Part shown: positions 14,538 to 35,099 of the stretch, piece by piece
Layout of the letters: every line of letters begins with the position of its first letter
Position numbering within the stretch: position 1 is the first letter of the stretch
Origin: Mizuhopecten yessoensis
Lineage: Eukaryota
Direction of reading: 5' to 3'
DNA length: 64,000 bases
NCBI RefSeq assembly: GCF_002113885.1
Contig: NW_018408914.1
Coordinates: 256,731-320,730, forward strand
The notes under the pieces: model-generated
Database searches by the model: none
Seen by the model: the letters and a program-made list of their open reading frames with translations, nothing else
Told to the model about the DNA's origin: nothing
Translations under genes and position numbers: made by a program

Positions 14538-14732
14538 ATGACAGAGTTGACTGATGGGAGACCTTCAGGGGGAGGGGAAACAAGGCGGAGTACCCCCGGG
14601 GACGGCAATTCGGGTGTGGCTGCATCCACCGATGTTCCAGCTCAGGTCACCGCTGGGCCATACCCCGGGGATTTCAGCCTTAATTTTACCAGAAATATAG
14701 GCGATTACTTAAAGGTGGAGTTTTTACTGGAG
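14538..14732 (+). CDS. PRDM13: PR domain zinc finger protein 13, coding exon 1
   Basis: GVAASTDVPAQVTAGPYPGDFSL resembles the start of the PRDM13 PR domain; donor GAG|gtacgt phase 0 (alternative in-frame donor AAG|gtggag at 14714). Confidence 0.8.
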
Positions 14733-14889
14733 GTACGTATATATTTTTAATTTATTTTCTTTCCAGTTTCACTTATTTTCAGAACAAAATACATTAACCA
14801 AATTTTATCAAAATTGTTTTCAATTGATTTGAAATATCAAAAATAAATCAAGAAAGATTTGATCAAAAAAATGTCGCAACGCATTTTAT

Positions 14890-16150
14890 GAATTTATTCA
14901 ATTTATTCAGTTAGTGTTTCTAAACTTGTAAATTCGAAGAAATTTAAGTGACGTATCATCTTTACAGAAACATACAAGAATATGTTTATATTTACAGAAA
15001 GATTAAAAATCGAGCAAAAAGGGTTTAGGGAAACGAAATATATATATATTTATAAAATAATAATTAATTATGTTTATAAAACAATACAGAAAAAATAACA
15101 CAAATAACGAAGTCTTCGTTTAGCATTAGCGCTTTCAGTGTTCACCAGTACATCAGACTCCTGGTTGCGATATTTGGAACATTTTGAACACAACACCACA
15201 AATGTAAACATAGTAAACAGGATATTTACATATGTACAAAAGTCACATTGGTCACAGGAGAATGAACAAACTGTCATATATCTGATCGGCGCTTACTTGC
15301 CTCTATCAGATACTTTCCAAGATTACATATTCTTTAGTATTCGGTGTATTAAGTAATTGAACAAGCTTATATACACTAGGGTAATTTCTATAGTAACATT
15401 TTAACTACTTCCGTCTTAAATCTGTATATCTTGTGCAAACTAAAACAAAATGAAACTCGTCTTCTATGTCATTAAGATTACACTTTGTACATAATCTATT
15501 AGTTCTAACAGTGCCAACATAACGCCCAGATTCAATGTTTAATTTGTGAGGTGACAGCCTAAGTCGAGCAATTTCTTTCATATAACCGATATTAACTGAT
15601 TTTGTTAGATACGATTGCAGTAAAATTGTATTGTTTAATTCTCTGTAAAGCATACCTTTAGATATACCTGTAGTTAAACTTAGTTAAAAAATGTCAAATA
15701 ATCTTGCCTTAATAATTAAAAAAGTGAAATTGTTTCCATTCTGAGTGTCCCAGATATATCCTAAGCCTAAACGATACAATTCATCTTTTATTTCACGGAT
15801 TCTTGATTATCAGCATATTTTCATAACAGGATTTCAAAATAAAGTGTTCGGTATTGAGCAATTTAAACCAATATTTAAATATTTTAAGTTTCCTTGTAAC
15901 ATGCAATGGATAACGGCCTAATTCGAAATATACCATCATATTCGGAGTGGATTCGTGCACACCTAGCAACCTTTTACAAAAATCTACAAGTAGTTTTTCG
16001 ATGTCGGGGCCTTTATGGAATCCCCATACTTCTGATCCGTAGTTGACTATACTACTGACATAAGTATCAAACACTACTAATTGAGTCTCAATATTAAAAT
16101 ACTGTTTTTTACATACACCCAATAATGCAAACAAAGCTTTTCCAACTTGA
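14890..16150 (-). mobile_element. 5'-truncated, decayed non-LTR retrotransposon (LINE) 3' end in PRDM13 intron 1
   Basis: ORF pieces 15793-16134 (YGSEVWG...FCKRLLGV...ELGRYPL) and 15405-15653 (RLRLSPHKLNIESGRY...CTKC...EDEFHFVLVC, C-terminal CCHC-type motif) with stops/frameshifts; repeated tgaataaat tail on the - strand near 14890-14910. Confidence 0.85.
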
Positions 16151-16859
16151 TAACTAAATCATCGGAGTTTTATTTACTAAGATAAAAAAGAGATTTGGCC
16201 GGGACCGGAGAAATACGTCGAGATAAACGGGGTCTCCGAGTTATAAGAGTTCGCGATAACGATAAAAACGTAAAAAAATCAATCATTGAAGATCTTACGG
16301 ACCACTTAAAACTTTCCTCCAGTGATGATTTAAACAAAACAAAAATCGTTTTGGTTCTTAACAGCAAATTAATCAAAGAACTGTGAAGGAATTCATAAGT
16401 TTGTCAACAATAGGCATCTGTATTGAACTAATTTCATCCACCACAAATATTGTATTTTAAGTCTAGTTATTGATAATTTTAATTGATACAATTAAAGATT
16501 TGTACACATGTCTGTACGCCTCGAACGAAACCCTACACAGATCTATATTACATCGTAAGATTAAATAAGGGAGCGTATCGTGCACATATATGCCAGCAGC
16601 TTAATACAATGTTTCGTCATCATATATAGGGAAAGTGATAACTTTGAACGCCGTCAAAGATTGATTTGTAAATAATACAGGGCGCCGTATAAATGGTGTA
16701 TATAATTAAATCAATTAAATTGATGAACGGATTGTAATATCATCTGTGATAAAAACAGAAGCAGAGACAGAGGAGTGTTGACAAAGCACCGTCTTATTGT
16801 ATACACTAGGTTAGCAGGCGACGAGGATTACTGCGATGCCAGTACTTTTAGTGTTAATT

Positions 16860-18400
16860 ACTGGAGTAAAAGGGACAATTCTGTCGTACAGTACCAGTAT
16901 AAGGGATGCTGATTGTGGGGGATCAAAGAGACAATCCTGTCTTACAGTAAACGTACTATTGATGTTAATTACGGGGGATGTAAGGGACAACCCTGTCTTA
17001 CAGTAAAATTACTATTGATGTAATTACGGGGGATGTAAGGGACACCCCTGTCTTACAGTAAAAGTACTATTGGTGTTAATTACGAGGGATGTAAGTGACA
17101 ACCCTGTCTTACAGTGAAAGTACTATTGATGTAATTACGGGGGATGTAAGGGACACCCCTGTCTTACAGTAAAAGTACTATTGGTGTTAATTACGAGGGA
17201 TGTAAGTGACAACCCTGTCTTACAGTGAAAGTACTATTGATGTAATTACGGGGGATGTAAGGGACAAACCTATCTTACAGTAAACGTACTATTGATGTTA
17301 ATTACGGGGGATGGAAGGGACAACCCTGTCTTACAGTAAAATTACTATTGATGTAATTACGGGGGATGTAAGGGACACCCCTGTCTTACAGTAAAAGTAC
17401 TATTGGTGTTAATTACGAGGGATGTAAGGGTCAACCCTGTCTTACAGTAAAAGTACTATTGGTGTTAATTACGAGGGATGTAAGGGTCAACCCTGTCTTA
17501 CAGTAAAAGTACTATTGGTGTTAATTACGAGGGATGTAAGTGACAACCCTGTCTTACAGTGAAAGTACTATTGATGTAATTACGGGGGATGTAAGGGACA
17601 CCCCTGTCTTACAGTAAAAGTACTATTGGTGTTAATTACGAGGGATGTAAGGGTCAACCCTGTCTTACAGTAAAAGTACTATTGGTGCTAATTAAGGGGG
17701 ATGTAAGGGACAACCCTGTCTTACAGTAGAAGTACTATTGATGTTAATTACGGGGGATGTAAGGGACAACCCTGTCTTACAGTAAAAGTACTATTGATGA
17801 CAATTACGGGGGATGTAAGGGACAACCCTATCTTATAGTAAAAGTACTATTGATGTAATTACGGGGGATGTAAGGGACAACCCTATCTTACAGTAAAAGT
17901 ACTATTGATGACAATTACGGGGGATGTAAGGGACAACCCTGTCTTACAGTAAAAGTACTATTGATGACAATTACGGGGGATGTAAGGGACAATCCTGTCT
18001 TACAGTAAAAGTACTATTGATGTCAATTACGAGGGATGTAAGGGACAACCCTATCTTATAGTAAAAGTACTATTGATGTAATTACGGGGGATGTAAGGGA
18101 CAAACCTATCTTACAGTAAAAGTACTATTGATGTTAATTACGGGGGATGTAAGGGACAACCCTGTCTTACAGTAAAAGTACTATTGGTGCTAATTAAGGG
18201 GGATGTAAGGGACAACCCTGTCTTACAGTAAAAGTACTATTGATGTCAATTACGAGGGATGTAAGGGACAACCCTGTCTTACAGTAAAAGTACTATTGAT
18301 GTTAATTAAGGGGAATGTAAGGGACAACCCTGTCGTAAAATTAAATTACTAATAGCGTTAATCAGGGGGACTCGAAGAGACAACCCTGGCGTACAGTAAC
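16860..18400. repeat. 55-56-bp minisatellite (taattacgggggatgtaagggacaaccctgtcttacagtaaaagtactattgatg)
   Basis: About 25 near-identical units with degenerate edges. Confidence 0.95.
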
Positions 18401-20626
18401 TTTACTAGTGCTGATAACGAGGATCTAATGAACAACCCTGTCATAGAATATCAGTACTAGTGATGTCAATGGCATTGCTCTAAGGGATACCTTCTCATAC
18501 AGTTATAGTACTATACAGTGGTACATTCGTACAGTGGTATTACTAGTAGTGTAATAATACTATAGAGATGGAGATGGAGTGTCCTAAAACACAGACCTGT
18601 CCTACTGTAGTATTACCAATGGTGTTATAATATTATAAATCGGGAGTGTCCTAAAAGACAGCCCTGTCGTACAATAGCTGTACTACGGGTATCAGGCACG
18701 GTCGCCCTGTCATTGTCAGAACGGTCCGATAGTGTCACCAATCCGCACTTTATTTGAAGGAATAAAACCTTAAACTTGTAATTACCGAGATCTCCGCCAC
18801 TCATACCCGACGTAAACATGGTAGTTTACTTGTTATAAAAACACTGGAGTACAAATTACCCTTGCTTGATTAGAAAATGGCATTTTTGACAAAATCGAAA
18901 GCTGGAGCTGTCACCGACATGACCTGAAAGTGGACAGTGAAGAGCCATCCAACGATGAAATGTACATTCGCGGTCGCGTGCTGGACGATGATTGGTTGAG
19001 ATCAAGTGGTCTCCGCCTTCCGTTGGCGCGTGCCGGTACAGAACATCGCCCAGATACCACATGTCACGCGCATGGAACAATATTTTGTTTTAATTCTAAG
19101 ATCTACACATCAGTATCAACCAACAATATAGCAGACGTTCACTGATTCATTTATAATGTTGTAAAGAGTGGTTGTCAGTTTTTATCATTGCGTTAATATT
19201 GATAGTGAAGTTTATTGTGTGGACAACATTGGCAGCTAACTTTTACGTCCTAATTTCTGTAAACAGTTAATAGTAAATTATTTGGTCTGATTTTAACCAT
19301 GACCTGTCAAACGTTATTCTATAAGAACATCCCGAGTTCTAAATCTTGTGATTTATGATGCAAAACTTGTGACCTTTTTTGTAATAAATCTCAAAATGGT
19401 ATGTAGGTTCTAAATGGTAGAAAATATTATTTGCATTCAAAAGCGTGTTATTAGGGATTTGTAGTTTATATTTGAACAATTTGCGATTTTTTATTCAAAA
19501 TATTGCGTTTACATTTGAAATCTTGTGAATCATCATATGATACAAACAATCTTGGAAAAAGGCGATGACCACGATCAGATTAGGCACAATTCCATATTAG
19601 ACAAACAACGCCAGTTTACTTTCATACAGAACATGGTTAATTAAGTGAGCAAGTAGAACAGTTCCAAATATATTTCACAAGATTTGAATATACACCACAC
19701 TGCTTTTTAATATGGTTTTACGAGATGTTCCGAACTTTTATATATCAAGATTCCGAATGTACAACACGAAATTGATACTAAATGAAAAAAATAGTGAGGA
19801 AATAAACCGCTTTACTAGGAAAAATAAGCACAATTTTAAGAAAATAAATTACAAGATTTCAAATTCACAAGCATTTTCTTCTTGATCGTTGGATCGCATT
19901 TTCAAATTAGGTAAACTTTGTAATTCAGTCGTTATAATTCCATATACTGATGAGTATACAGAAAGAACTACTAAGAAAACCCTTTACGCACTTGTCTCAA
20001 TGTAATGTTGTATAGGTCTCTGTTTTTATTTGTTAAAATGCCGAAAGGTGGTGACACCGCAGACTTAGAATCTGATTCCTTGGTGACAAGTAGATGGACG
20101 GGTAGTTACATGGCAGGTATCCTCTTCTTTGTACAAATGTCAACTCTACATCGGTTACTTTGTCGAGAGGTCGTTTGATACAGAAGGTTTTGGGTTACTT
20201 CAGATCCGTCCGGGATCAAGGGTTTCAAACCTCGCGCGTGTGGGGCTAAGCCCAAAGCCAAACACTCGAGCCCACCGGCCACGTATAGAGGTGGCTACTC
20301 TCTGTCTCGTGTTACGGCCACTGGTCCAGCCGGCAGGACTGGTCAAACAGTGCCGCTCTAACTCCCGTCTCCGGTCAATGGTCGGACAATAGTTCGGTGA
20401 AAATGACAATTTCACAAATCTCCGGAAGACAAACGATCTCAAGTGATGTCAAATACGGAGAATGTCGCCCAGTTACCGATAGGGTGTGGATTCATTTGTT
20501 ATATTGATGGATCAACTTTCATAAGGAAGAATCTTACAAATATTTACAGTAGGAAACCATTTAAATTTTATGTTATCTAAAAGTGTTTGTACTATTAATC
20601 AGTTTGTGTAACATTTTCATCACCAG

Positions 20627-20897
20627 GTGAGGTACAAGAATGACACGATCTGTCTCGATATTGAATCAACCAATGAGCGACTCCAAAAGATCGAATCATC
20701 CAATCAGTGGCTCAGTCACGTACAGCCGGCACGAGACCGACACGAGCAGAATTGTGAATTTTATCGTAATGAAAATGGAGAGATTTTACTTCGAACTTTA
20801 AAGAAGGTGGAGAGTGGAGAACAGCTACTAGCCTGGTACAGCGAACAGTTGGCACGAGAATTTGCCATTCCGTTTCTAGGACTTCACAATATACTTG
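20627..20897 (+). CDS. PRDM13: PRDM13 coding exon 2 (PR/SET domain)
   Basis: NQWLSHVQPARDRHEQN...GEILLRTLKKVESGEQLLAWYS is a PR-domain core; caccAG| phase-0 acceptor, G|gtgagt phase-1 donor. Confidence 0.93.
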
Positions 20898-21182
20898 GTG
20901 AGTTGAATATTTTAATACTCGCTACGTCACGCATGTATATTAAAATACAAGTTTAACATTTTATTCAGATTATAGTCTGCACATGTTTAATACAATAAGT
21001 TAAAAAAAATCAATTGCAAAATTGAACAGAACGGGTTGAACGAAAGTTTTACCAAGTTAGTAAGTCCTCTTTGTCGTACGATTATCGTACACAGAATATA
21101 TAAATCTTATACAAAAATCGAGTTGTTGTACTTAATTAGATTTAAAAGACACGATAGATTCCTATAATCACCGTAAGTATGT

Positions 21183-21215
<33 letters not shown>

Positions 21216-21499
21216 TAGCCTCTATTTTGTTTGTTAAAGTGGTTTTACGTCCTCAGTCTCAGTTTGTCTTTGTTCACGTCCTTATTACCCCAGTTATTGT
21301 CCTTAATTAGCGATGTACACTTCCTCTATCGTGGCCGTCGATTAGTTACTAATATAAGGTCTAATAGGATCACGTATTACGTATCAATTATATTGAGGTT
21401 GAATCAAGGTAAAATGCTGCTACAAATGGACAAAGCGTCATCTATGAAACACTTTGAATCCATTCGTTATACACAACGACACAACGACACAAACCCCCC

Positions 21500-22110
21500 C
21501 ACAAAAGTCATACATTAAATACCACACAATAAAATTACAATAGTCATACATACATCACCACACAATACAATCACAGTAGTCATACATACATTATACATAC
21601 ATAATTACCACCTAATAAAATCACAGTAGTCATGCATACATTATACATACATAATTACCATGTAATAAAATCACAGTATTCATGCATACATTATATATAC
21701 ATAATTACCACGTAATAAAATCATAGTATTCATGCATACATTACCACACAATACAATCACAATAGTCATACATACATAACCACACAATAAAATCACAGTA
21801 TTAATACGTACATTAAATACCACGCAATAAAATCATAATATTCATATATATATTAATTACCACACAATACAATCACAGTATTAATACGTACATTACCACG
21901 CAATAAAATCATAATATTCATACAAGCATAATTACACAATAAAAAATATAAAATTTACAAAATTTATACATACATTACCACACAATAAAATAACTTTATA
22001 TAAAAAAAAAACATCAACACACAATAAAATCACAATATTCTTGCATACATAACCACACAATAAAATAACACTATTTATACATACACTACTACATAATAAC
22101 TTACTATCAT
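21500..22110. repeat. Degenerate AT-rich ~35-45-bp repeat (cacacaataaaatcacagtagtcatacatacattac)
   Basis: Recurrent cacacaataaaat motif. Confidence 0.8.
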
Positions 22111-22378
22111 GCATATATATATATATATCATCTTTATTTCCTTCAAATTGGAGAGCATGATACAGTCCATTATCCAGTTTCGCTGATATACATGACATCG
22201 ATTCTTTACGATTACTGTGGAAATATGGTTATATTTCAAATTTATGTATCGCAAAACTGTAAAACAATTATATAGTAGGTCGACATCAAACTAAACGCTA
22301 CATAATGTTTTGATCGATCTTCTGTGTTATGCTTATTTTAGAACTTGATTGACTGAATATTTGTATTGTCTTACTTAG

Positions 22379-23472
22379 GTAACCAGCAATACGTGTGTGA
22401 CAGGTGTGGGCAAACGTACACACACCCCAACCCACTGAAGCTTCACCTGGTGACCCGCTGTAACAAGGGACTGACCACACCCACTAAATCGTCCAGTATG
22501 CCGGACAGGGACATTCTGTTCAGACCCTATCTTGAGTGCAGCTGTCCTAACAGTAAACCAGACCGAGTGCCACCAGTTCCTGGTCCCAGCCACACACATC
22601 GTCAACCTTATCACAGCCACTGCGTCACCAGGCCGCTGCAACATGTGACAACATTAAACAGATCCAGTGCAATTGGTCAGCAGCAACTTAAGCGTGTGTT
22701 TCCTTCCGAAAATCTTCGTCCAGTCAATCTATCATTGAAGGAATCGCATGGAAAATCGAAGATAACCTTCCACGAGAGTCCGTTCCTCCGGCCAATACAG
22801 ATTTTCAACCACGGTCAGCCTCAGGTGTTTCCCTTTTCAATGGGAACGATGACGTCACCACCGTACAGGTGCTGTGACGTATGGGCCCCATACAACGCCA
22901 TATTGTCCCATCACCATCACCACCAGCAACAACACTCAACTCTCTGGGCAGGTAGACAAACAAGTTCTCATGCGCAACAGTTAGCAAACAACAGACAAAG
23001 CAAATGCCGGGGCAAACAAACAGCTGTCAATCTTCCGGTTCCGGTTGCGATGCCGTCTGAAGCGGACGGAGAACCGTTGGACTTACTTCCGAAGTCATTT
23101 TTTGCAAATAAGTCAAAGAAAGGACACTATTGTATATATTGTGGGAAACTTTATTCACGAAAATATGGTCTTAAAATTCACCTGAGGACCCATACAGGCT
23201 ACAAACCATTGAAGTGTAAGGTTTGTTTGCGACCTTTCGGCGACCCCAGTAATTTGAATAAGCATATCCGTCTTCACGCACAAGGTGAGACACCATATCG
23301 CTGTGACTATTGCGGAAAAGTTCTTGTTCGGAGGCGAGATCTCGAGAGACATATCAAATCCCGCCATCCGAGTGCTACAGGGAGCAATTTTGTGATGTCA
23401 CGTGACTATTCAACAGATATAGACTCGCCATCAGCAAAACATGACAATGACCAGGAGATCGTGGTCGTGTAA
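22379..23472 (+). CDS. PRDM13: PRDM13 coding exon 3 (C2HC-type ZF1, poly-His linker, three C-terminal C2H2 fingers)
   Basis: CIYCGKLYSRKYGLKIHLRTHTGYKPLKCKVCLRPFGDPSNLNKHIRLH...CGKVLVRRRDLERHIKSRHP is the PRDM13 signature; acceptor ttacttAG| phase 1; joined CDS 195+271+1094=1560 nt = 519 aa. Confidence 0.97.
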
Positions 23473-25345: not shown

Positions 25346-26436
25346 TTAATTGATTGAGTCCGTACTGGTTGTGGAGGTATTTGTACCTGTACTATCTCCT
25401 CTGTTCAGCGAGTTGTATACACTCTGGTGTGAGAGGTACCCCGCATGCGCGGAAACTGGTATGTGCGAGTTTGCAAAAGAAGCCAACATGGCGGGGTTGT
25501 GCATCATCCGGTTTGTCATGATTGGTGGTATTTGTCCAGGGTAGGGGAGAGGCATGGGGATAAACATACTGAGATCCCTCGCAGTTGGGTTACAGCCCAG
25601 GCGCTGAGCGAGGGACGTATGCGCCTGTGGGATGGATGGCGTCGGCATTTGAGCGCCCCCGGCGACGGTTACTGATATGCCTGCCGCGGCCAGACCTGGC
25701 TGGAACACAGTCAGGGTGTCCTCCGCCCTACCCCTCGCTATTGTCGTGGAGGCGGCCTGTACGGCACCAGAGAATGATTGTGATGACGCCGCTGGGGAAC
25801 TTCTCTGAATTTCTGGGTCGACTGGTGTGTTCACCGGGTTGCTACTCCTCGCGTGCAGATCGCCGTTTGTTTGATATGCATGGTTACCGACAATATGGTT
25901 GCTGTTGGTTTGGTAGTTCTTTGGTTGGTGGCTGTGTATTTGGGTTCCAGTTCTTTCGTTGACCTCTCGGCTGCCATCCCCCTGACTATTAACTAACGTG
26001 ATACTTTGGCATGGCTTGTTTAACTTGCAGGATGGTCCATGTATCGAATCACTTGAAGCATAACGTTTCCGTTTATTTGATGGACACGGCCATGATGGTT
26101 TATCTCCTTGAGTTGATGACGCGTTAGTCTCGGTCGGATTTGCCGCTTTGTTGGTTTGACTAGTTAGACGATCTGTAGGTGTACTGTCAATGGGTTCTTC
26201 CACATTCTTCTTTATAGCTGTACACTTCTGAGATGGCTCCGCGACCGACGAGCCTTTCTTGGGGGCTGTGGAGGCGGTGACTGTGATTGGACCGTCACCC
26301 GACATGGCGCCTGGCGACAATGTGATGTTCAGTGTGATGCTGGTCGTAGTAAGGTCCATCGGTGTGACGTCATCAATTTTGTGTTTATTGGAAACATCTC
26401 CGTCTTTAGATGTTGATTCTTCACACTGGATTTCAC
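25346..26436 (-). CDS. DUF3504/Crypton-derived protein, terminal coding exon (low-complexity S/T/P/N tail with PMDLT motif)
   Basis: Acceptor tttttgttctacAG| phase 1 runs in frame into the 337-aa ORF ending at 25346; AATAAA on the - strand near 25092. Confidence 0.8.
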
Positions 26437-26734
26437 CTGTAGAACAAAAACAAGTATTTTTGAGCTACTCTTTACTATTACCAAACCGAAAAAAGACCTG
26501 GCTCTTAAATGATCGATAAGCTATTATAAGATAGTATATTCATAAACCAAAATTGCGTAGACCAGATTAAAGACCTGTGCCTTTTGAATTTCGTGAAATT
26601 GGTCACTGTACATATCAAAATATGTAATTATTCCCTTAACTTGAAAGAGTTATTTAAATTTCAAATCATCAATAATCTCTCTGATGACTATATAAAGCCA
26701 TTCAAAAAGGTTTTACTATCAACTAGCTAACAAC

Positions 26735-26887
26735 CTGTGCTTGAGTCCTGGTATATCTGGATCCGCTTCAGCCAAGCTCCAAATCCTGCCAAACTTCCGG
26801 GATCAAGTGTTTTCAACATTTCCCGGAATTTGAACTTGGCGTCTTGGACTGCCGCCATTACGGAGACGCTCAACGTAGCAGGATTAC
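26735..26887 (-). CDS. DUF3504/Crypton-derived protein, internal 153-nt exon
   Basis: ttttaaAG|...ACAG|gttgtt; phase 1-1, open frame GNPATLSVSVMAAVQDAKFKFREMLKTLDPGSLAGFGAWLKRIQIYQDSST. Confidence 0.78.
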
Positions 26888-28139
26888 CTTTAAAATAATG
26901 AAATAATCAATTATGTAAGTGGACAAAAGATTCGTTTATATTTTACTGATTTTAAAGAAGTTGTGAAATAAAAACATTTTTTTTTTGCGATCATTTACAT
27001 TTCGACGATTGACAAAGTACATTTGGTATGAATTGTGAAATACTGATTTCTACAATATAACTACGATAAGCTAGTCTCCATTGGTTCTAGTGACAATACA
27101 TAGGAACGTTATCGTACAACATCGTACAACACACAATGTGTGTCATTCAACTTGTGCCATATCTTCAGACCTATATTAAGAAACCGTCCTTGATATCCAA
27201 CAGATTCTAAAGTTCTCAGAACGTCGGAAACGGGTTATCAGATAGCCGTCCCGATAACATCCGGGGCGAGGTGCGGTGAGTACAGAGACCCTTTCACCTC
27301 GCCACAAGTATATCCCCCTGACAGTATCTAAACCCTCCGAGCCACAAGGGGATGATATGCTGTGTTGTCCTATCGTCTAGATACCAGCTCGAAATACCAT
27401 CGTATAGCTATACGCTGTTCTTAAAAATTGTGTGCTTTTAAACATATCTGTAGCCATTATATCGATCGTGCTACTTATTCTCAATATTACATTATAATAT
27501 TATCAAACGCTTTGCAGTAAGAACAACCCGAGCTAATCGGACTACCGCAGCAGTGATCCGATTGAAAACACACATAATATTTGTAATAGAAATATACACA
27601 AAAATCTAAATTTCAGTGGTTTTAACATGCTCATCCACTTACGTAACAATCTATGCGAAATGTCTGATTGTCTGTGTCTAGATATATAACCTACAGTGGA
27701 CATTTAAAGATATTGTCTACTGGTAAATACTAAATAGCATTTCAGTTAAATAGCTGTACCCCTTTTCTTGCGTGCACCACTGGTGATAGGTTTGTGCAAA
27801 CTTTGGGTCAGAGAAAACTGTAAATAATGGTCCGTTTCAGAGATATTCACTGGGTAAAACATTTGCTATCTCGTTAAATACATGGTTATAAATGTGAACC
27901 TTTTAATATAGAACGATTGAGGTTTTTCGTTGGTTTTTGAACAAACAAAAAATTGTATTACAGGTTTCACTCGGCGTCCGGCTTAGGTTTGTATTTGAAA
28001 GAGATAAAGTTGTAAAGAAAAGAAAATGATATCGAGAAAAGGATTCAAGGAATGATTCACCTTTTCAAACGTATAAAACGTATTAAAAGACAATTGCAAT
28101 GGAGAGAGCCAAAATAATAAGACTGCAAGTCAAAGAATG

Positions 28140-28615
28140 TGAACATGATAAGATGTATTTCGTAAAGCTATAACATTTATTCAAACAGGTATCACTCGTC
28201 ACGTAAAGCTGTACCATTTAGTCAGACAGGTATCACTCGTCACGTAAAGCTATAACATTTAGTCAGACAAGTATCACTCGTCACGTAAAGCTATACCATT
28301 TAGTCAGACAGGTATAACTCGTCACGTAAAGCTATACCATTTAGTCAGAAAGGTATCACTCGTCACGTAAAGCTATACCATTTAGTCAGACAGGTACATG
28401 TATCACTCGTCACGTAAAGCTATACCATTTAGTCAGACAGGTTTCACTCGTCACGTAAAGCTATACCATTTAGTCAGACAGGTAACACTCGTCACGTAAA
28501 GCTATACTATTTAGTCAGACAGGTATCACTCGTCGCGTAAAGATATAACATTTAGTCAGAAAGGTATCACTCGTCGCGTAAAGATATAACATTTAGTCAG
28601 AAAAGTATCACTTTC
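28140..28615. repeat. 41-bp minisatellite (tcactcgtcacgtaaagctataccatttagtcagacaggta)
   Basis: Period 41 (28192, 28233...). Confidence 0.93.
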
Positions 28616-28624
28616 AACGTTTAA

Positions 28625-28990
28625 AGAGCGGGCTGAGAAACATACCCATGTGCTTAACTGGCACACTGGTGCTGGGGGCGGGCTGAGAAACATGTCCCTG
28701 TGCTTACCCGGCCCACTGGTGCTGAGGGCGGGCTGAGAAACATGGCCCTGTGCTAACCCAGCCCACTAGTGCTGATGGCGAGCTGAGAAACGTGTCCCTG
28801 TGCTTAGCCGGCACACCGGTACTGGGGCGGGCTGAGAAACATGTCCCTGTGCTTACCCGGCACACTGGTGCTAAGGGCGCGCTGATAAACATGCCCATGT
28901 GCTTACCCGGCACACTGGTGCTGAGGGCGGGCTAAGAAACATGTCCACGTGCTTACCCGGCACACTGGTGCTGAGGGCGGGCTGAGGTAC
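28625..28990. repeat. ~50-bp GC-rich minisatellite (gcgggctgagaaacatgtccctgtgcttacccggcacactggtgctgagg)
   Basis: Period ~50 (28628, 28678, 28728...). Confidence 0.92.
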
Positions 28991-29054
28991 ATGCACCTAT
29001 AAATCGTCTACTTACCCGGGACTTTTGCTCCTGTTGTGGGCGGTATGTACTTAC

Positions 29055-30639
29055 CCTGTGAATTGATGTTGAGGGTAGGCTGGGGAATATCCATGGGAGA
29101 TCGAGACCGCGTGTCACTACTAATAGAGATACTCCGGGAGAATGTTTTGGACTGTGAGACAGGAAGCTGTAACCGCTGTATCTTCAAGTCATCATCTTCT
29201 TCCTCCCGGGACCAGCTGTCGGGTAGGGTAGCGTTTGGACATTTTTCAACATATCCTGGCTCCTCCTTGATTCTGTTTAAACTTGAATTAAACAATGGCG
29301 TGCTTTTCTCACTTTCAGTTTTGAGTGATTCTCTAGCAGAATGGGAAAAAGACACAAACGCGTTAATGTTTCGGTCAGCTTCCGGTGACTGTGATATGTA
29401 AGTCAGTGTGTTGTGCGATGTGGGAGATCCGGATGAGGAGGGTAAGTGGGTCGTGTAGCTCTCGGACAGTAAGGACTCGGCCGGGGGGTTGAGCGCGGCA
29501 CGGGGGAGGCCCGTGATGTCGCGGATCATGCGGACAAGATCACTGAGTTTGTTAACGCCCATAGCGCATGTCCGATACCATGCCTGCACGGGGGACGGAT
29601 GGAGAGTTGTTATACCAAGATAAAATGGCGAGTTTTCGTGCTGCATATTTGGAGGTCGTTTTTGGCTGTAGAGTTTGTATATTCCGACTGGATCTCGCTC
29701 GGGTACCTCTGGTTGAGCCCATATACAAAGCTTCGTGTACGATGAACGACATTGCTCGGGCTTGGCAGATGTGGTGTTGGTGGTGTTTGCGGTAGTTGCT
29801 TGTGTGTTTGAAGAGGAGGTGGCGCCATCGATCTGACCACGGCTAAGGATAGGCTCATATAGAATATATTCCTTCCCGCTCTGGTCCGCCCGAAGTTTAA
29901 TATCGCCCCAGACTAGGTTCTTGTGGTCTATCGCCTTTCGCAAACGGAAGTGGACGATGAACATGAAACACATACTGTTAATGATAGACATTGGTGTGTA
30001 TGGTCCCATCTCCCGTGCGGTAAACAATTGGTTGACCTTGTCCAAAGTCACTTTGCCAAAGGGTTCATTGGGTTTTTTGCTGCCCTTACCAAGCTCTCGT
30101 AACCTCTGTTGCTTGTATTTGAGCGCGTGTCGTGTGTTTACGAAAACCACATCGCGGGTAACAGAGGCCTGGTAGCTCTTCATCTTCAGATACCGCTCCA
30201 CGCTACAAAGCATGCCCCTCAGACTGGCCGGCTCGTACTCATTCCCGTCGTGTTTTTTGACGATAGTGAAGAAGTTAGATAGATACCTGTCAAGTTCCAG
30301 GGGAGGAATCGTCTCCGGCGGTCGGGAATCGTTGAGAGATCTGAGATAGGCTATCAAAATCCGAATGTCCGTGTCAGTCTTACGTTGGGTATTCCGGTTT
30401 TCCATGTTGATGCCAAGGTCGTCTTCCGTATCCGGCCCTCCATAATCGGAATAGTTACCGATGCCAGAGCTACTGGGGTGAGCATGCTCCTTACGTGCAG
30501 AAATCCCAGACCATAAGCGATGGTTTTCTGTCATCACATTTTCTTCAGTAGAATCGTCTACCTGGTCCTCGTCGCTGTCTATCGCCAATGAGTCGTCGTC
30601 TGAGTCATTGTCTGTCCTACTTTCGTTGACTTTCTCCAT
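29055..30639 (-). CDS. KIAA1958/ZMYM/QRICH1-like DUF3504 (Crypton tyrosine-recombinase-derived) protein, first coding exon
   Basis: ENRNTQRKT...LDRYLSNFFTIVKKHDGNEYEPASLRGMLCSVERYL...LRELGKG...FRLRKAIDHKNLVWGDI...RDPVGIYKLYSQKRP...PFYLG...WYRTCAMGVNKL follows the Crypton-A/DUF3504 pattern; donor G|gtaagt phase 1; joined CDS 1585+153+1091=2829 nt = 942 aa. Confidence 0.88.
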
Positions 30640-32989: not shown

Positions 32990-33244
32990 TAGGCATAAGA
33001 TTCCTTTAATTGACACAAACATACTGAAATAACTTTAGTAGAGTACGTATATTTTTTAAACCTATATAATTTACGTTTTGAATAATCATCAAACCTTGCT
33101 TATGTGTTGTATATAGGCAACCGATGGTCTGCTGATATATGTTACTGGTCACTTCAGAGTGTGAATGGTCTAATAATGATACAGGTGATATCAACAGGTG
33201 AGGAGGCCTGACTGCGGGGCTAGATGTCATCATGACCGCAACTT

Positions 33245-33402
33245 TCACTGCGCATTCAACTTGCGCATATCAAACCAATATGGAAGACAGCGTTACGACA
33301 GGTGTCAGCTGAGACGGAGTATGAAAACAAAACTTTTTGGAAGTATTATGCTTTGATGTTGACTGTTTGTTGCATGGTTTCAACCTTTGATTTTCAAATG
33401 AG
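33245..33402 (+). promoter_or_regulatory. Candidate promoter and non-coding first exon of the downstream + strand gene
   Basis: Paired TGCGCA motifs at ~33250-33268, then donor-like GAG|gtaaac at 33402; acceptor tgtgtttcAG at 34354 precedes the ATG at 34446. Confidence 0.35.
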
Positions 33403-34445
33403 GTAAACAACAACATTTGTTATCGCTACAAATTCTTTATCCAACCGATGTTGGCTTTGTTATTGTTTCATTCATACGCATAGGAATTTGACTTAGTTGA
33501 CGAATACTGTAGTAGAGTAGACCCCACTGTAGTAATATTTCGGTTGGGATCAGTCTGCAACATATACCGAATTTCTGCATACTAACAAATCTTAAATAGA
33601 TTATAACAGCTTTCACTGCAGAATGTATCATTTCGTCAGGTTCCTCCTTTGTCGAATGCCAAAAGTCTTGGTCGGTTTTAACTGTTTAAGGGGTGTGTAT
33701 CATGGTATGAGGGTGTGTATTGCACTGGAAGTCATGTAGGCCTACTGTGTATGATCAGCATGCATAGGCTACGTAACAATTAACAACCGATTTATGTTGT
33801 CTGCGTGATGTTATTTGAATTAAATATCATTAAACTAATCGAATTATGCAACTTAAAATTGTTAAAACTGATTGTCTGCGGTCTGTAATAAGATTTGTTC
33901 AGTGTGTAAATGTCATTCCATTACAAGATGAACAAGATGACAAAAGAAGGGAAGTCGTCAGGTCTGTAGTTCAGCACATGCATAACAAGATATATGCGAT
34001 GTGTAAATATGTGAAATAATGTCTCTTGAAACTGCATGCTTGATCCAGTTTGTTGTTTATAGTGTTACTCTGTTACTTAGGTTTGACCAGTCAATCAAAA
34101 CATAATGAGGAATCAGTCACTCACTCAGATGATGTAATTGATGAACCAATAAGTTACCAGCTACAATTTCTTGGTTCTCTTGGCACACATTAATTTTCTG
34201 TATGACCTGGTATGCATACCGTATTAGGGATGTTTTGGACTTAGCAAAAAATTGATCGCTACTAAGGTTATGAGTATAAGGCTACTTCTTTTAATGTCTA
34301 TATATTACAAAATTTAACTTTCATAGTAGATTTTATTTGCATTATGTGTTTCAGTTCACAAATTCGCAGCAAGATTATGGAAGTGAGTTTCTGAGGTGTT
34401 CACATCGAACTTTTGACAGGGTTGTGATGTTTGTAGTACCATAAC

Positions 34446-34843
34446 ATGATGGACACTGGTCAAGTGGTACTTCAAGACCCTCCAAAGAGGGCACCTCCTC
34501 TAGGAAGCCCCACCCACACAGCAGTGGCAATGACCCACATCAGTAGTATTAACGGCATCCCGCCACCTCCAACGCATCCTCACAACAGCGACATTACTAC
34601 AGGCTCAACAATGTTTCCAGTGACAGCAGTGATTCCAGCCAAACCAAAGAGAGCAGTGACAATAAACAACAATACAGTAATTGACAAATCATTACATCAG
34701 CAGGTGGGCCAATCTTCCCCTCAAACTCAGGGAAAGGATTCTGCTCCCTGTCGTCTGGAAAATCCATCTGTCCCCAGCACTCTAAAAAGTCATGGTCAGC
34801 CCATCACAACCAATGGCAATGTGCAACATGAACATCCCAAAAG
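34446..34843 (+). CDS. First coding exon of an unidentified protein (P/T/S-rich disordered N-terminus)
   Basis: 132 open codons in a GC-richer island, ending at a perfect AG|gtaagt donor (phase 2); no recognisable domain. Confidence 0.7.
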
Positions 34844-35099
34844 GTAAGTACATACGTACTGAGTTATTAGTTTGTACTTTCAGATAGTATTTATTAATGA
34901 GGAATTAGAAGTACTAAGAGTATTAACAGGTAGATGAGGCCCAATTTCCTCTTCAGGCCTACATGTTTTCACAACAGCATAGTAATACTGGTACACCATT
35001 TGGTTCCTAATGTATTACTAAATAGTATATATTTATATAATATGGCATCTTTATTTGATGTAGTGGAAATGAAGCTTGTTTTAGAATATGAATGTTGAG

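What the first reader, a model, noticed from the sequence alone, without database searches (positions are those of the whole stretch)
25346..30639. Probable domesticated Crypton tyrosine recombinase converted to a nuclear regulator, tail-to-tail with PRDM13
Seen: an intact, spliced 942-aa ORF whose DUF3504-like domain sits entirely in one 1585-nt exon, with no terminal repeats visible. The first recombinase Arg region survives (FRLRKAIDH), but the usual Lys hairpin (ERxTKT-like) is replaced by a T/S/N-rich insert, and the domain stops after MGVNKLSDLVRMIRDITGL, with no HxxR, GH or catalytic Tyr motif. Established: KCTD1, KIAA1958, ZMYM2/3/4 and QRICH1 derive from Crypton-A recombinases. Inference: this is a catalytically dead, host-co-opted copy lacking MYM fingers, BTB or Q-rich domains, so it may be a separate, lineage-specific domestication. 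Added motifs (IKEE SUMO consensus, PMDLT, basic NKRKR) fit a chromatin or corepressor role.
Basis: partly seen in the sequence, partly recalled or inferred. Interest (0 to 1): 0.8.

Follow-up and report, generated by a model that had tools for sequence, protein, structure and literature searches.

The report
Mollusc-wide domesticated Crypton recombinase gene
This scallop gene is a transposon recombinase that lost its cutting residues and became an ordinary single-copy host gene more than 500 million years ago; bivalves, snails and cephalopods all keep it, and it adds one more old Crypton domestication to the few already described.

Summary
Window 25346-30639 (minus strand) carries an intact three-exon gene of 942 codons. 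A QRICH1-like N-domain plus DUF3504 (Pfam E 2e-17) lies wholly in exon 1.

Aligned with active-type Crypton recombinases, only the first Arg survives. The Lys hairpin, HxxR, His and Tyr are gone.

It is a host gene, not an element:
- It is single-copy in the 988-Mb genome (Mizuhopecten yessoensis). That genome also holds young Crypton families, 98-99% identical, with intact catalytic residues.
- Orthologues exist in scallops, oysters, pearl oyster, unionid, clams, Lottia, Lymnaea, octopus and cuttlefish. They form one clade (100% support) that mirrors the species tree, and all are catalytically dead.
- dN/dS against Pecten maximus is 0.03-0.04 in the domain.
- The PRDM13-like neighbour, tail-to-tail, is conserved in scallop and oyster, and lies within three locus tags on the same chromosome in a unionid.

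The AlphaFold model (pLDDT 84) best matches the QRICH1 DUF3504 (Z 17.8), then Cre (Z 12.5).

It is not the WOC/ZMYM/QRICH1 orthologue, because the scallop has that gene elsewhere. The best tree puts it apart from KIAA1958, but an AU test cannot exclude a sister relation (p 0.39).

Function is inferred only: a non-catalytic nuclear DNA- or factor-binding adaptor.

Verdict: a new member of a known kind.

The parts
29055..30639 (-). Exon 1 (1585 nt, aa 1-528 plus the first base of codon 529); start ATG at 30639-30637
   Evidence: ORF and splice donor read directly. Collinear with Pecten maximus exon 1 at 79% aa identity. 100% single copy in the genome.
30418..30639 (-). Acidic N-terminal tail, aa 1-74 (pI 4.05), poorly conserved outside scallops
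30070..30417 (-). N-terminal four-helix domain (QRICH1-like / recombinase core-binding type), aa 75-190
   Evidence: Pfam PF25561 at E 6.6e-4 here and above its cut-off in relatives. Model pLDDT above 90; aligns to the Cre N-domain and to SAM-like integrase N-domains.
29485..30069 (-). Remnant of the recombinase catalytic domain (DUF3504), aa 191-385. First Arg kept in FRLRK (29923-29949). It ends with the helix MGVNKLSDLVRMIRDITGL (29506-29562).
   Evidence: Pfam PF12012 at E 2e-17 over aa 203-372. Catalytic columns read R T P E E - where active elements read R K H R H Y. Z 17.8 to the QRICH1 DUF3504. dN/dS 0.02-0.04.
29740..29853 (-). T/S/N-rich insert in place of the Lys beta-hairpin (aa about 263-300). 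The extra length is specific to scallops.
   Evidence: Alignment A1. pLDDT below 50. dN/dS 0.17-0.19.
29056..29484 (-). Fast-evolving linker, aa 386-528, containing RIKEEP (29257-29274)
   Evidence: dN/dS 0.42-0.70. Alignable only among scallops.
26888..29054 (-). Intron 1 (phase 1), with 41-nt and 50-nt minisatellites at 28062-29048
26735..26887 (-). Exon 2 (153 nt): conserved helical island AKFKFREMLKTLD...FGAWLKRIQIY (26751-26840)
   Evidence: Conserved from clams to cephalopods in alignment A2. Present in the P. maximus locus and in transcript L027.
26437..26734 (-). Intron 2 (phase 1)
25346..26436 (-). Exon 3 (1091 nt including the stop at 25346-25348). Mostly low-complexity tail with the conserved island SITLNITLSPGAMSGDGPITVTAST (26267-26341) and the basic patch NKRKR (26063-26077).
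   Evidence: Unique in the genome. The island is also found in Pinctada, Lottia, Octopus and Acanthosepion. No Pfam family. dN/dS 0.29-0.38.
14538..23472 (+). Neighbour: PRDM13-like gene (exons 14538-14738, 20624-20899, 22375-23469), tail-to-tail
   Evidence: 100% identical to Mizuhopecten yessoensis 'PR domain zinc finger protein 13-like'. Same arrangement in Pecten maximus and Saccostrea echinata.
34446..34847 (+). Neighbour: first coding exon of a Sec2p/RAB3IP-like gene, head-to-head
   Evidence: Syntenic with the P. maximus upstream gene.

Best explanation
The locus is the Yesso scallop orthologue of a single-copy host gene found across conchiferan molluscs (bivalves, gastropods, cephalopods). 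The gene arose by domestication of a CryptonA-type tyrosine recombinase before these classes split, more than about 500 million years ago. The transposon reading frame survives as one exon. It encodes the N-terminal helical domain and roughly the first two thirds of the catalytic domain. The Lys hairpin, HxxR, His and the nucleophilic Tyr are gone, so the protein cannot cut or join DNA. Two downstream exons add a long disordered tail with two conserved islands and a basic, NLS-like patch. SHOWN: gene structure, single copy, orthology, synteny, purifying selection, loss of the catalytic residues, and a Cre/QRICH1-like fold. INFERRED: the strongly conserved, basic (pI about 9.6) Cre-like clamp now serves as a non-catalytic binding module in the nucleus. 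It would bind DNA and/or a partner protein, as the QRICH1 DUF3504 binds SEPHS1 in the Zincore coregulator and the ZMYM3 DUF3504 binds RAP80. The tail would supply short docking motifs. It most likely represents a domestication separate from KCTD1, KIAA1958 and WOC/ZMYM/QRICH1.
For: Structure and frame. Domains: Pfam DUF3504 at E 2e-17 plus the QRICH1 N-domain. Catalytic loss: only the first Arg remains, and even that is Lys in Mya, Dreissena and Lottia; all 32 clade members lack K, H, R, H and Y, while the genome's own multi-copy elements read RKHRHY or RKTRHY. Single copy: exon 1 has one 100% hit and the next best is 38%; exon 3 is unique. Orthologues: Pecten maximus, Saccostrea (2 species), Pinctada, Mya, Dreissena, Octopus, Acanthosepion, and Sinanodonta, Lymnaea, Lottia. 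In the exhaustive search there is a score gap: orthologues score at least 228 bits and 46% identity, everything else at most 189 bits. Trees: the clade has support 100 and a stem of 0.6-1.0, with gastropod, cephalopod and bivalve branching as in the species tree. The domain sits in one exon in Lottia, Sinanodonta, Octopus and Saccostrea. Selection: dN/dS is 0.03-0.04 in the domain at dS 0.8-0.9. Synteny: PRDM13-like lies tail-to-tail in P. maximus and S. echinata; in Sinanodonta the two genes carry locus tags 028097 and 028100 on the same chromosome; the upstream Sec2p-like gene is shared with P. maximus. Fold: pLDDT 83.9; QRICH1 9hjt_H at Z 17.8 and rmsd 2.6 A over 158 residues; Cre at Z about 12.5 over 240-250 residues. 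The domain pI is 9.3-9.9 in most orthologues checked (8.5 in Dreissena), like active elements. Not WOC: a MYM finger plus a multi-exon, QRICH1-like DUF3504 lies at C2412 in the same genome. KIAA1958 of sharks forms a separate clade with 100% support. Known DUF3504 roles: PMC5358723 (RAP80 binding) and bioRxiv 10.64898/2026.10.26.761783 (SEPHS1 binding).
Against: There is no direct evidence of function, localisation or partners. Transcript evidence comes from a related scallop, not this species. An AU test does not reject a tree in which the mollusc clade and KIAA1958 are sisters (p 0.39), and the backbone of the trees is weakly supported, so independence of the domestication is likely but not proven. 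KCTD1's DUF3504 could not be put in the tree. The PRDM13 neighbour was not seen within 10 kb in Lottia or Octopus. Loss of the first Arg in some lineages, and of the Lys hairpin, removes residues that also contact DNA in true recombinases, so retained DNA binding is uncertain.
Confidence: 0.8

Rival explanations
1. Same domestication event as vertebrate KIAA1958. Under this reading, a single bilaterian-age exaptation was retained only in molluscs and jawed vertebrates and lost elsewhere.
For: Both are catalytically dead DUF3504 genes of unknown function with the domain in one exon. The AU test does not reject a sister relation (lnL difference 5.3, p 0.39). KIAA1958 scores fairly high against the mollusc domain (P0100, 138 bits).
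Against: The free FastTree and IQ-TREE trees place the two clades apart, each next to different active-type elements. Both sit on long stems, which pull towards each other in such tests. KIAA1958 still has alignable, degenerate sequence at the HxxR and Tyr columns (HSFY-F), whereas the mollusc gene has none. The architectures differ: the domain is C-terminal in KIAA1958 and N-terminal here. KIAA1958 is reported only from jawed vertebrates (PMC3212892), so many independent losses would be needed.
Confidence: 0.1
2. Divergent paralogue or orthologue of the WOC/ZMYM/QRICH1 family that lost its MYM fingers.
For: The best structural match is the QRICH1 DUF3504 (Z 17.8), with the same C-terminal truncation point. 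UniProt's automatic name is 'ZMYM2-like/QRICH1 C-terminal domain-containing protein'. There is a weak hit to Pfam's QRICH1 N-domain.
Against: Sequence similarity to QRICH1 is marginal (18 bits, E 0.008; 14-20% identity), against 150-190 bits to active-type Cryptons. The scallop has its own MYM-finger gene with a multi-exon DUF3504 that is close to QRICH1 in sequence. That gene falls elsewhere in the tree, though on a long branch. There are no MYM fingers in any orthologue.
Confidence: 0.04
3. A decaying or recently immobilised Crypton copy, mis-joined by chance to downstream open frames, rather than a functional gene.
For: The genome is rich in Crypton-like DUF3504 loci: at least 82 were scored out of 441 candidates, including young families. 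The domain lies in one intronless exon.
Against: The gene is single-copy, with orthologues in three mollusc classes and conserved flanking genes. dN/dS is 0.03 in the domain. Exons 2 and 3 are conserved as far as cephalopods. An intron-free transcript contig exists in a related species.
Confidence: 0.01

Closest known systems
QRICH1 DUF3504 domain (Zincore complex, PDB 9hjt/9hju)
   Same: Closest solved structure: Z 17.8, rmsd 2.6 A over 158 residues. Both are catalytically dead Cre-like modules that end right after the helix equivalent to MGVNKL..., and both have a preceding helical N-domain that Pfam recognises as PF25561. The QRICH1 domain is a protein-binding module of a transcription coregulator.
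   Different: Only 14-20% identical. QRICH1 has a small N-terminal helical fold described as a CARD, then a Q-rich region, and carries the domain at its C-terminus. It belongs to the WOC/ZMYM lineage, which the scallop has as a separate gene.
KIAA1958 (jawed vertebrates)
   Same: A dead DUF3504 gene of unknown function with the domain in one exon. Sequence similarity is moderate (P0100, 138 bits).
   Different: It forms a separate clade with 100% support in the free trees. The domain is C-terminal. It retains degenerate residues in the C-terminal catalytic part. It is reported only from gnathostomes. A sister relation is not formally rejected.
KCTD1 isoform b (vertebrates)
   Same: According to PMC3212892, an N-terminal DUF3504 confined to a single exon was joined by splicing to downstream host exons, and the event is of similar age (over 500 My).
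   Different: Downstream is a BTB/POZ domain, which is absent here. That insertion followed the vertebrate KCTD1/KCTD15 duplication, and KCTD1 keeps the conserved His. It was not available for the tree.
Active-type CryptonA elements, including two young families in the same genome (L002, L010)
   Same: 36-38% identical over both domains. These are the nearest sequence relatives outside the orthologue clade.
   Different: They keep R-K-H/T-R-H-Y, are intronless 2.1-2.5 kb units, and are present in many copies that are 98-99% identical.
Cre recombinase
   Same: Two-domain fold aligned over 240-250 residues, Z about 12.5.
   Different: 7-9% identity. The part carrying HxxR, Trp/His and Tyr, and the C-terminal exchange helix, is missing or disordered here.

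Membership tests
Active tyrosine recombinase / mobile Crypton | Catalytic set Arg-Lys-His-x-x-Arg-His/Trp-Tyr | tested here: not met
   Only the first Arg is present. The columns read R T P E E - against RKHRHY in active-type relatives.
Active tyrosine recombinase / mobile Crypton | Multiple dispersed, similar copies; intronless unit | tested here: not met
   One copy at 100% and the next at 38%. The gene has two introns and unique downstream exons.
DUF3504 (Pfam PF12012) domain family | Score above Pfam's gathering threshold over most of the profile | tested here: met
   64.2 bits against a cut-off of 29.7, covering profile positions 8-160 of 162.
DUF3504 (Pfam PF12012) domain family | Cre-like fold shared with a solved DUF3504 | tested here: met
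   Z 17.8 to QRICH1 9hjt_H and Z about 12.5 to Cre; model pLDDT 83.9.
Domesticated transposase-derived host gene | Single-copy orthologues whose tree follows the species tree | tested here: met
   A 32-row clade (24 rows in the reduced tree) with support 100 and gastropod, cephalopod and bivalve structure; 11 named mollusc species.
Domesticated transposase-derived host gene | Conserved genomic neighbourhood | tested here: met
   PRDM13-like lies tail-to-tail in P. maximus and S. echinata, and within three locus tags in Sinanodonta. The Sec2p-like upstream gene is shared with P. maximus. Not seen within 10 kb in Lottia or Octopus.
Domesticated transposase-derived host gene | Purifying selection | tested here: met
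   dN/dS is 0.03-0.04 in the domain and 0.19-0.23 over the whole gene, at dS 0.7-0.9, against P. maximus.
Domesticated transposase-derived host gene | Expression as a spliced mRNA | tested here: inconclusive
   An intron-free 3048-nt contig with the full coding sequence comes from a sequencing run of a related scallop. There are no RNA data for this species in the tools.
WOC/ZMYM/QRICH1 | MYM-type zinc fingers (WOC/ZMYM) or CARD plus Q-rich region (QRICH1), with a C-terminal DUF3504; one gene per invertebrate genome | tested here: not met
   No such domains occur in any orthologue. The scallop's MYM-finger gene with a QRICH1-like DUF3504 lies on another contig.
KIAA1958 | Orthology: sister position in the tree and shared architecture | tested here: inconclusive
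   The clades are separate in the free trees and the architecture differs, but the AU test does not reject a sister relation (p 0.39).
KCTD1 isoform b | BTB/POZ domain downstream of the DUF3504 exon | tested here: not met
   No BTB hit in exons 2 or 3, nor in the full-length orthologues.

The most novel reading that the evidence does not exclude
The protein could be a mollusc-specific, Zincore-like coregulator. In this reading its dead Cre-like clamp locks C2H2 zinc-finger transcription factors onto DNA, and the PRDM13-like neighbour, kept beside it for several hundred million years, is a client. The conserved tail-to-tail pairing would then reflect functional coupling rather than a bystander position in a regulatory block. 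Two hints point this way. The closest structure is the QRICH1 module of Zincore bound to a zinc-finger protein on DNA. And one protein of unknown species fuses a PR domain to a DUF3504 (P0064).
Probability: 0.06. Interest if true: 0.75.

Novelty: new member of a known kind. Interest (0 to 1): 0.45.

Why it matters
Crypton-derived DUF3504 genes (KCTD1, KIAA1958, ZMYM2/3/4, QRICH1, WOC) are a textbook case of recombinase domestication. So far they have been described almost only from vertebrates and from the bilaterian WOC lineage. This locus adds an old event, predating the split of bivalves, gastropods and cephalopods. It has an unusually clean signature: one exon of transposon origin, dN/dS of 0.03, and live relatives of the donor element still in the same genome.

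The mollusc gene and QRICH1 end their recombinase remnant at the same structural boundary despite very low sequence identity. That suggests the N-domain plus the first part of the catalytic domain is a self-standing binding module that evolution has reused more than once.

It also gives mollusc developmental genetics an uncharacterised, highly constrained nuclear-type gene beside PRDM13 to test. The automatic databases already label the domain, and further lineage-specific domestications were anticipated, so this is an extension rather than a surprise.

Tried and rejected
1. A second word-index protein search with alignment A1 returned exactly the same 40 proteins and added nothing.

2. A single-sequence AlphaFold run gave pLDDT 35 and was discarded. 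The alignment-based run was used instead.

3. The 'careful' IQ-TREE run on 77 rows, and the AU test on 77 rows under the mixture model, did not finish in the time allowed. The quick PMSF tree and an AU test on 40 rows under LG+G4 are reported instead. A first attempt with 153 rows also timed out, and FastTree was used there.

4. The Atlas feature search with exon 3 gave only low scores (0.84 or less) to disordered tails of nuclear factors. That is a lead at most.

5. Pfam finds nothing in exons 2 and 3.

6. The PR-domain/DUF3504 fusion P0064 could not be traced to a contig or a species.

7. Six unnamed members of the orthologue clade could not be assigned to species.

8. PMDLT as a CtBP-type motif was rejected, because it is not conserved among scallops.

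9. Complex prediction was not sent. The report does not claim a specific binding pair, and neighbourhood alone is not sufficient reason.

10. The joined 942-aa spliced model was never handed to any database or folding tool. Searches were done exon by exon, by reference. The exons were joined only inside scripts, for the frame check, dN/dS and local comparison with loci already fetched.

11. No human contig was fetched. Human QRICH1 appeared only as a PDB hit, and primate PRDM13 proteins only as rows. None of these was saved or searched further.

12. KCTD1's DUF3504 and a broad WOC/ZMYM sample could not be obtained for the tree.

Full report
WHAT IS THERE. On the minus strand of window 25346-30639 lies a three-exon gene. 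Exon 1 is 30639..29055, exon 2 is 26887..26735 and exon 3 is 26436..25346, all with canonical GT/AG sites and two phase-1 introns. Joined, they give 2829 nt: 942 codons with a single terminal stop. The Pecten maximus locus has the same three exons. A 3048-nt contig assembled from a sequencing run of a related scallop (L027) carries the full reading frame with both introns absent, so it is a spliced transcript. The joined model was used only inside scripts. All database and folding calls were made exon by exon, by reference.

DOMAINS AND CATALYTIC RESIDUES. Pfam places DUF3504 (PF12012) at aa 203-372: E 2e-17, 64 bits against a cut-off of 29.7, covering profile positions 8-160 of 162. A sub-threshold QRICH1 N-domain (PF25561) lies at aa 113-171. 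Both are in exon 1, and exons 2 and 3 match nothing. Two relatives from the protein search, P0037 and P0040, also match Pfam's Phage_integrase family. They carry the full recombinase signature GLRG ... TKTR ... NHSARK ... GH(K/R)N ... NNYS. Aligned to them, the scallop protein keeps only the first Arg (FRLRK). It replaces the Lys hairpin with a T/S/N-rich stretch and has nothing alignable after MGVNKLSDLVRMIRDITGL. I scored the six catalytic columns across 178 relatives. Every member of the orthologue group lacks Lys, His, the second Arg, His/Trp and Tyr. Mya, Dreissena and Lottia have even replaced the first Arg by Lys. The extra length of the T/S/N insert is specific to scallops. No terminal inverted or direct repeats bracket the exon or the gene.

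HOST GENE, NOT AN ELEMENT. The window comes from a 988-Mb genome. The neighbouring protein is 100% identical to a Mizuhopecten yessoensis entry, which identifies the species. Exon 1 has one 100% match in that genome and exon 3 is unique. The next best exon 1 matches are 36-38% identical and fall into repeat families. Those families are 2.1-2.5 kb units, 97.7-99.4% identical between copies, and they keep R-K-H/T-R-H-Y. So apparently live relatives of the donor element sit in the same genome as the dead, fixed copy.

ORTHOLOGUES. The word-index search found orthologues in Pecten maximus (79%), Saccostrea echinata and S. cucullata, Pinctada imbricata, Mya arenaria, Dreissena polymorpha, Octopus vulgaris and Acanthosepion pharaonis. 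The exhaustive HMMER search with the domain returned 2574 hits at E up to 0.001. It shows a clear gap: orthologue-grade hits score at least 228 bits and 46% identity, and everything else at most 189 bits and 40%. That search added Sinanodonta woodiana, Lymnaea stagnalis and Lottia gigantea.

TREES. In a FastTree tree of 153 rows and an IQ-TREE (LG+C20 PMSF, quick) tree of 77 rows, these sequences form one clade with support 100 and a long stem of 0.6-1.0. Inside it, gastropods, cephalopods and bivalves (Pteriomorphia against Unionida plus heterodonts) branch as in the species tree. In Lottia, Sinanodonta, Octopus and Saccostrea the domain is again one uninterrupted exon.

SELECTION. Against P. 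maximus, at dS 0.8-0.9, dN/dS is 0.03-0.04 for aa 75-385. It is about 0.02 in the two conserved blocks and 0.17-0.19 in the insert. It is 0.42-0.70 in the linker, 0.29-0.38 in exon 3, and 0.19-0.23 overall.

SYNTENY. The PRDM13-like gene occupies window 14538-23469 on the plus strand, with the stop codons about 1.9 kb apart. The same tail-to-tail arrangement is found in P. maximus and S. echinata. In Sinanodonta the two genes carry locus tags 028097 and 028100 on the same chromosome. The head-to-head Sec2p/RAB3IP-like gene (window 34446-34847) is shared with P. maximus. In Lottia and Octopus no PRDM13 lies within the 10 kb I could see.

FOLD. With a 62-sequence alignment, AlphaFold gives mean pLDDT 83.9, with 227 of 331 residues at 90 or more. 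Only the insert and the ends are uncertain. The best solved match is the DUF3504 of QRICH1 in the Zincore complex (9hjt_H): Foldseek E 2e-10; Z 17.8, rmsd 2.6 A over 158 residues. Cre recombinase follows at Z about 12.5 with 240-250 aligned residues spanning both domains. QRICH1 ends a few residues after the helix that matches MGVNKL.... So both proteins stop the recombinase remnant at the same structural boundary, before the helices that carry HxxR, Trp/His and Tyr. The domain is basic: pI 9.65 here and 9.3-9.9 in most orthologues (8.5 in Dreissena), like active elements at 9.2-9.4. The N-terminal 74 residues are acidic, pI 4.05.

THE TAIL. Beyond the domain only two islands are conserved across classes:
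- The exon 2 helix, AK..F..ML..LD....L..F..WLK..RI.
- ITLNITLSP.A..G.GPITVTAS in exon 3.
The rest is low-complexity. RIKEEP and the basic patch PCPSNKRKRYASSDS are conserved among the three scallops only. PMDLT is not conserved even there. The motif-based argument for a corepressor is therefore weak, although a basic NLS-like patch recurs in other orthologues.

RELATION TO KNOWN DOMESTICATED CRYPTONS. Kojima and Jurka (PMC3212892) describe four events: KCTD1, KIAA1958a, KIAA1958b/L and WOC/ZMYM/QRICH1. All lost the Tyr and the second Arg. They also mention a possible tunicate case. Neither that paper, nor a 2026 paper on DUF3504 elements (PMC13465315), nor a text search for DUF3504 with mollusc terms describes this gene.

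- WOC/ZMYM/QRICH1 is excluded. The scallop genome has a MYM finger at C2412:683463-683582, followed on the same strand by a multi-exon DUF3504 whose peptides closely resemble QRICH1. The window gene matches QRICH1 only at 18 bits.
- KCTD1b is excluded by architecture, since there is no BTB domain. It is also excluded by its vertebrate-specific origin. I could not obtain its sequence for the tree.
- KIAA1958 of sharks (P0100 and relatives) forms its own clade with 100% support, away from the mollusc clade in both trees. It keeps degenerate sequence at the C-terminal catalytic columns. But the backbone is poorly supported, and an AU test on 40 rows does not reject a sister relation (lnL difference 5.3, p 0.39). 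Independence from KIAA1958 therefore rests on the free tree, the different architecture and the disjoint taxon ranges, not on a significant test.

MECHANISM. Shown: the protein cannot act as a recombinase, yet selection holds its Cre-like two-domain module almost unchanged. Inferred: the module works as a binding device. Two precedents exist for DUF3504. The ZMYM3 DUF3504 region binds RAP80/ABRA1 (PMC5358723). The QRICH1 DUF3504 binds SEPHS1 in Zincore, a coregulator that engages zinc-finger factors on DNA (PDB 9hjt title; bioRxiv 10.64898/2026.10.26.761783 and PMC13538652). The basic charge of the domain allows DNA contact, but loss of the Lys hairpin makes that uncertain. I put about 0.5 on 'nuclear, non-catalytic DNA- and/or factor-binding adaptor' and about 0.9 on 'domesticated Crypton-derived host gene'.

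The most novel reading still open is that the protein is a Zincore-like partner of its zinc-finger neighbour PRDM13. A PR-domain/DUF3504 fusion protein of unknown origin (P0064) hints at this. I give it about 6%. Conserved microsynteny around a developmental transcription factor has a more ordinary explanation in shared regulatory landscapes.

VERDICT. The event is wider and older than proposed, since cephalopods are included. Separateness from KIAA1958 is likely but unproven, and the functional motifs are largely unsupported. It is a new member of a known kind. Databases already flag the domain automatically, and further lineage-specific domestications were expected, so interest is moderate.

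Noticed in passing
L002-L007, L009 (family 1) and L010-L012 (family 2); e.g. G000:C5510:483721-487542 and G000:C1190:113809-117630: The scallop genome holds two young Crypton-like families. Their units are 2.4-2.5 kb and 2.1 kb, and copies are 97.7-99.4% identical. Their open frames of about 640 and 506 aa keep the full R-K-H/T-R-H-Y set. At least 82 DUF3504 loci were scored out of 441 candidates.
   Followed up: partly
window about 29549-29695; L025 (G000:C2206:153780-157926) and L026 (G000:C4804:221529-225672): A piece of exon 1 about 144 nt long (aa 316-365) occurs at 88% nucleotide identity inside a dispersed repeat of more than 3 kb. The two repeat copies are 80% alike over 2.4 kb. This looks like a gene fragment captured by a mobile element.
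   Followed up: partly
window 28062-29048 (intron 1): Two adjoining minisatellites, with periods of 41 nt (28062-28688) and 50 nt (28578-29048), start only a few bases downstream of the exon 1 donor site.
   Followed up: no
G000:C2412 about 664000-683600, minus strand (L017-L019): This is the scallop's WOC/ZMYM-like gene. It has a MYM (zf-FCS) finger, then a DUF3504 split over several exons and very similar to QRICH1. More than one N-domain-like segment matched the profile.
   Followed up: partly
protein P0064 (UniParc UPI0006B0FD6F, species unknown): A 707-aa protein combines a PRDM-type PR domain with a QRICH1-like N-domain and a DUF3504. This is curious, given that the window gene sits beside PRDM13. 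It could be a real fusion or a merged gene model.
   Followed up: partly
proteins P0095 (Bufo), P0074 (Rana/Lithobates/Aquarana), P0057 (Sinanodonta), P0075 (Dreissena): Other catalytically dead DUF3504 clades are restricted to single lineages. One is a toad protein with a KRAB box plus DUF3504. Further unrecorded Crypton domestications are likely.
   Followed up: no
L014 about 17458-17460 (Pecten maximus locus): The P. maximus assembly changes reading frame in exon 3, so its annotated protein (837 aa) ends differently from the scallop transcript P0002 and from the window gene. This is either an assembly error or a real frameshift.
   Followed up: no
window 33198-33465: A non-coding or UTR block between the gene and the Sec2p-like neighbour is conserved with P. 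maximus (L014 6827-7095). It may be shared promoter or 5' UTR sequence of the divergent gene pair.
   Followed up: no
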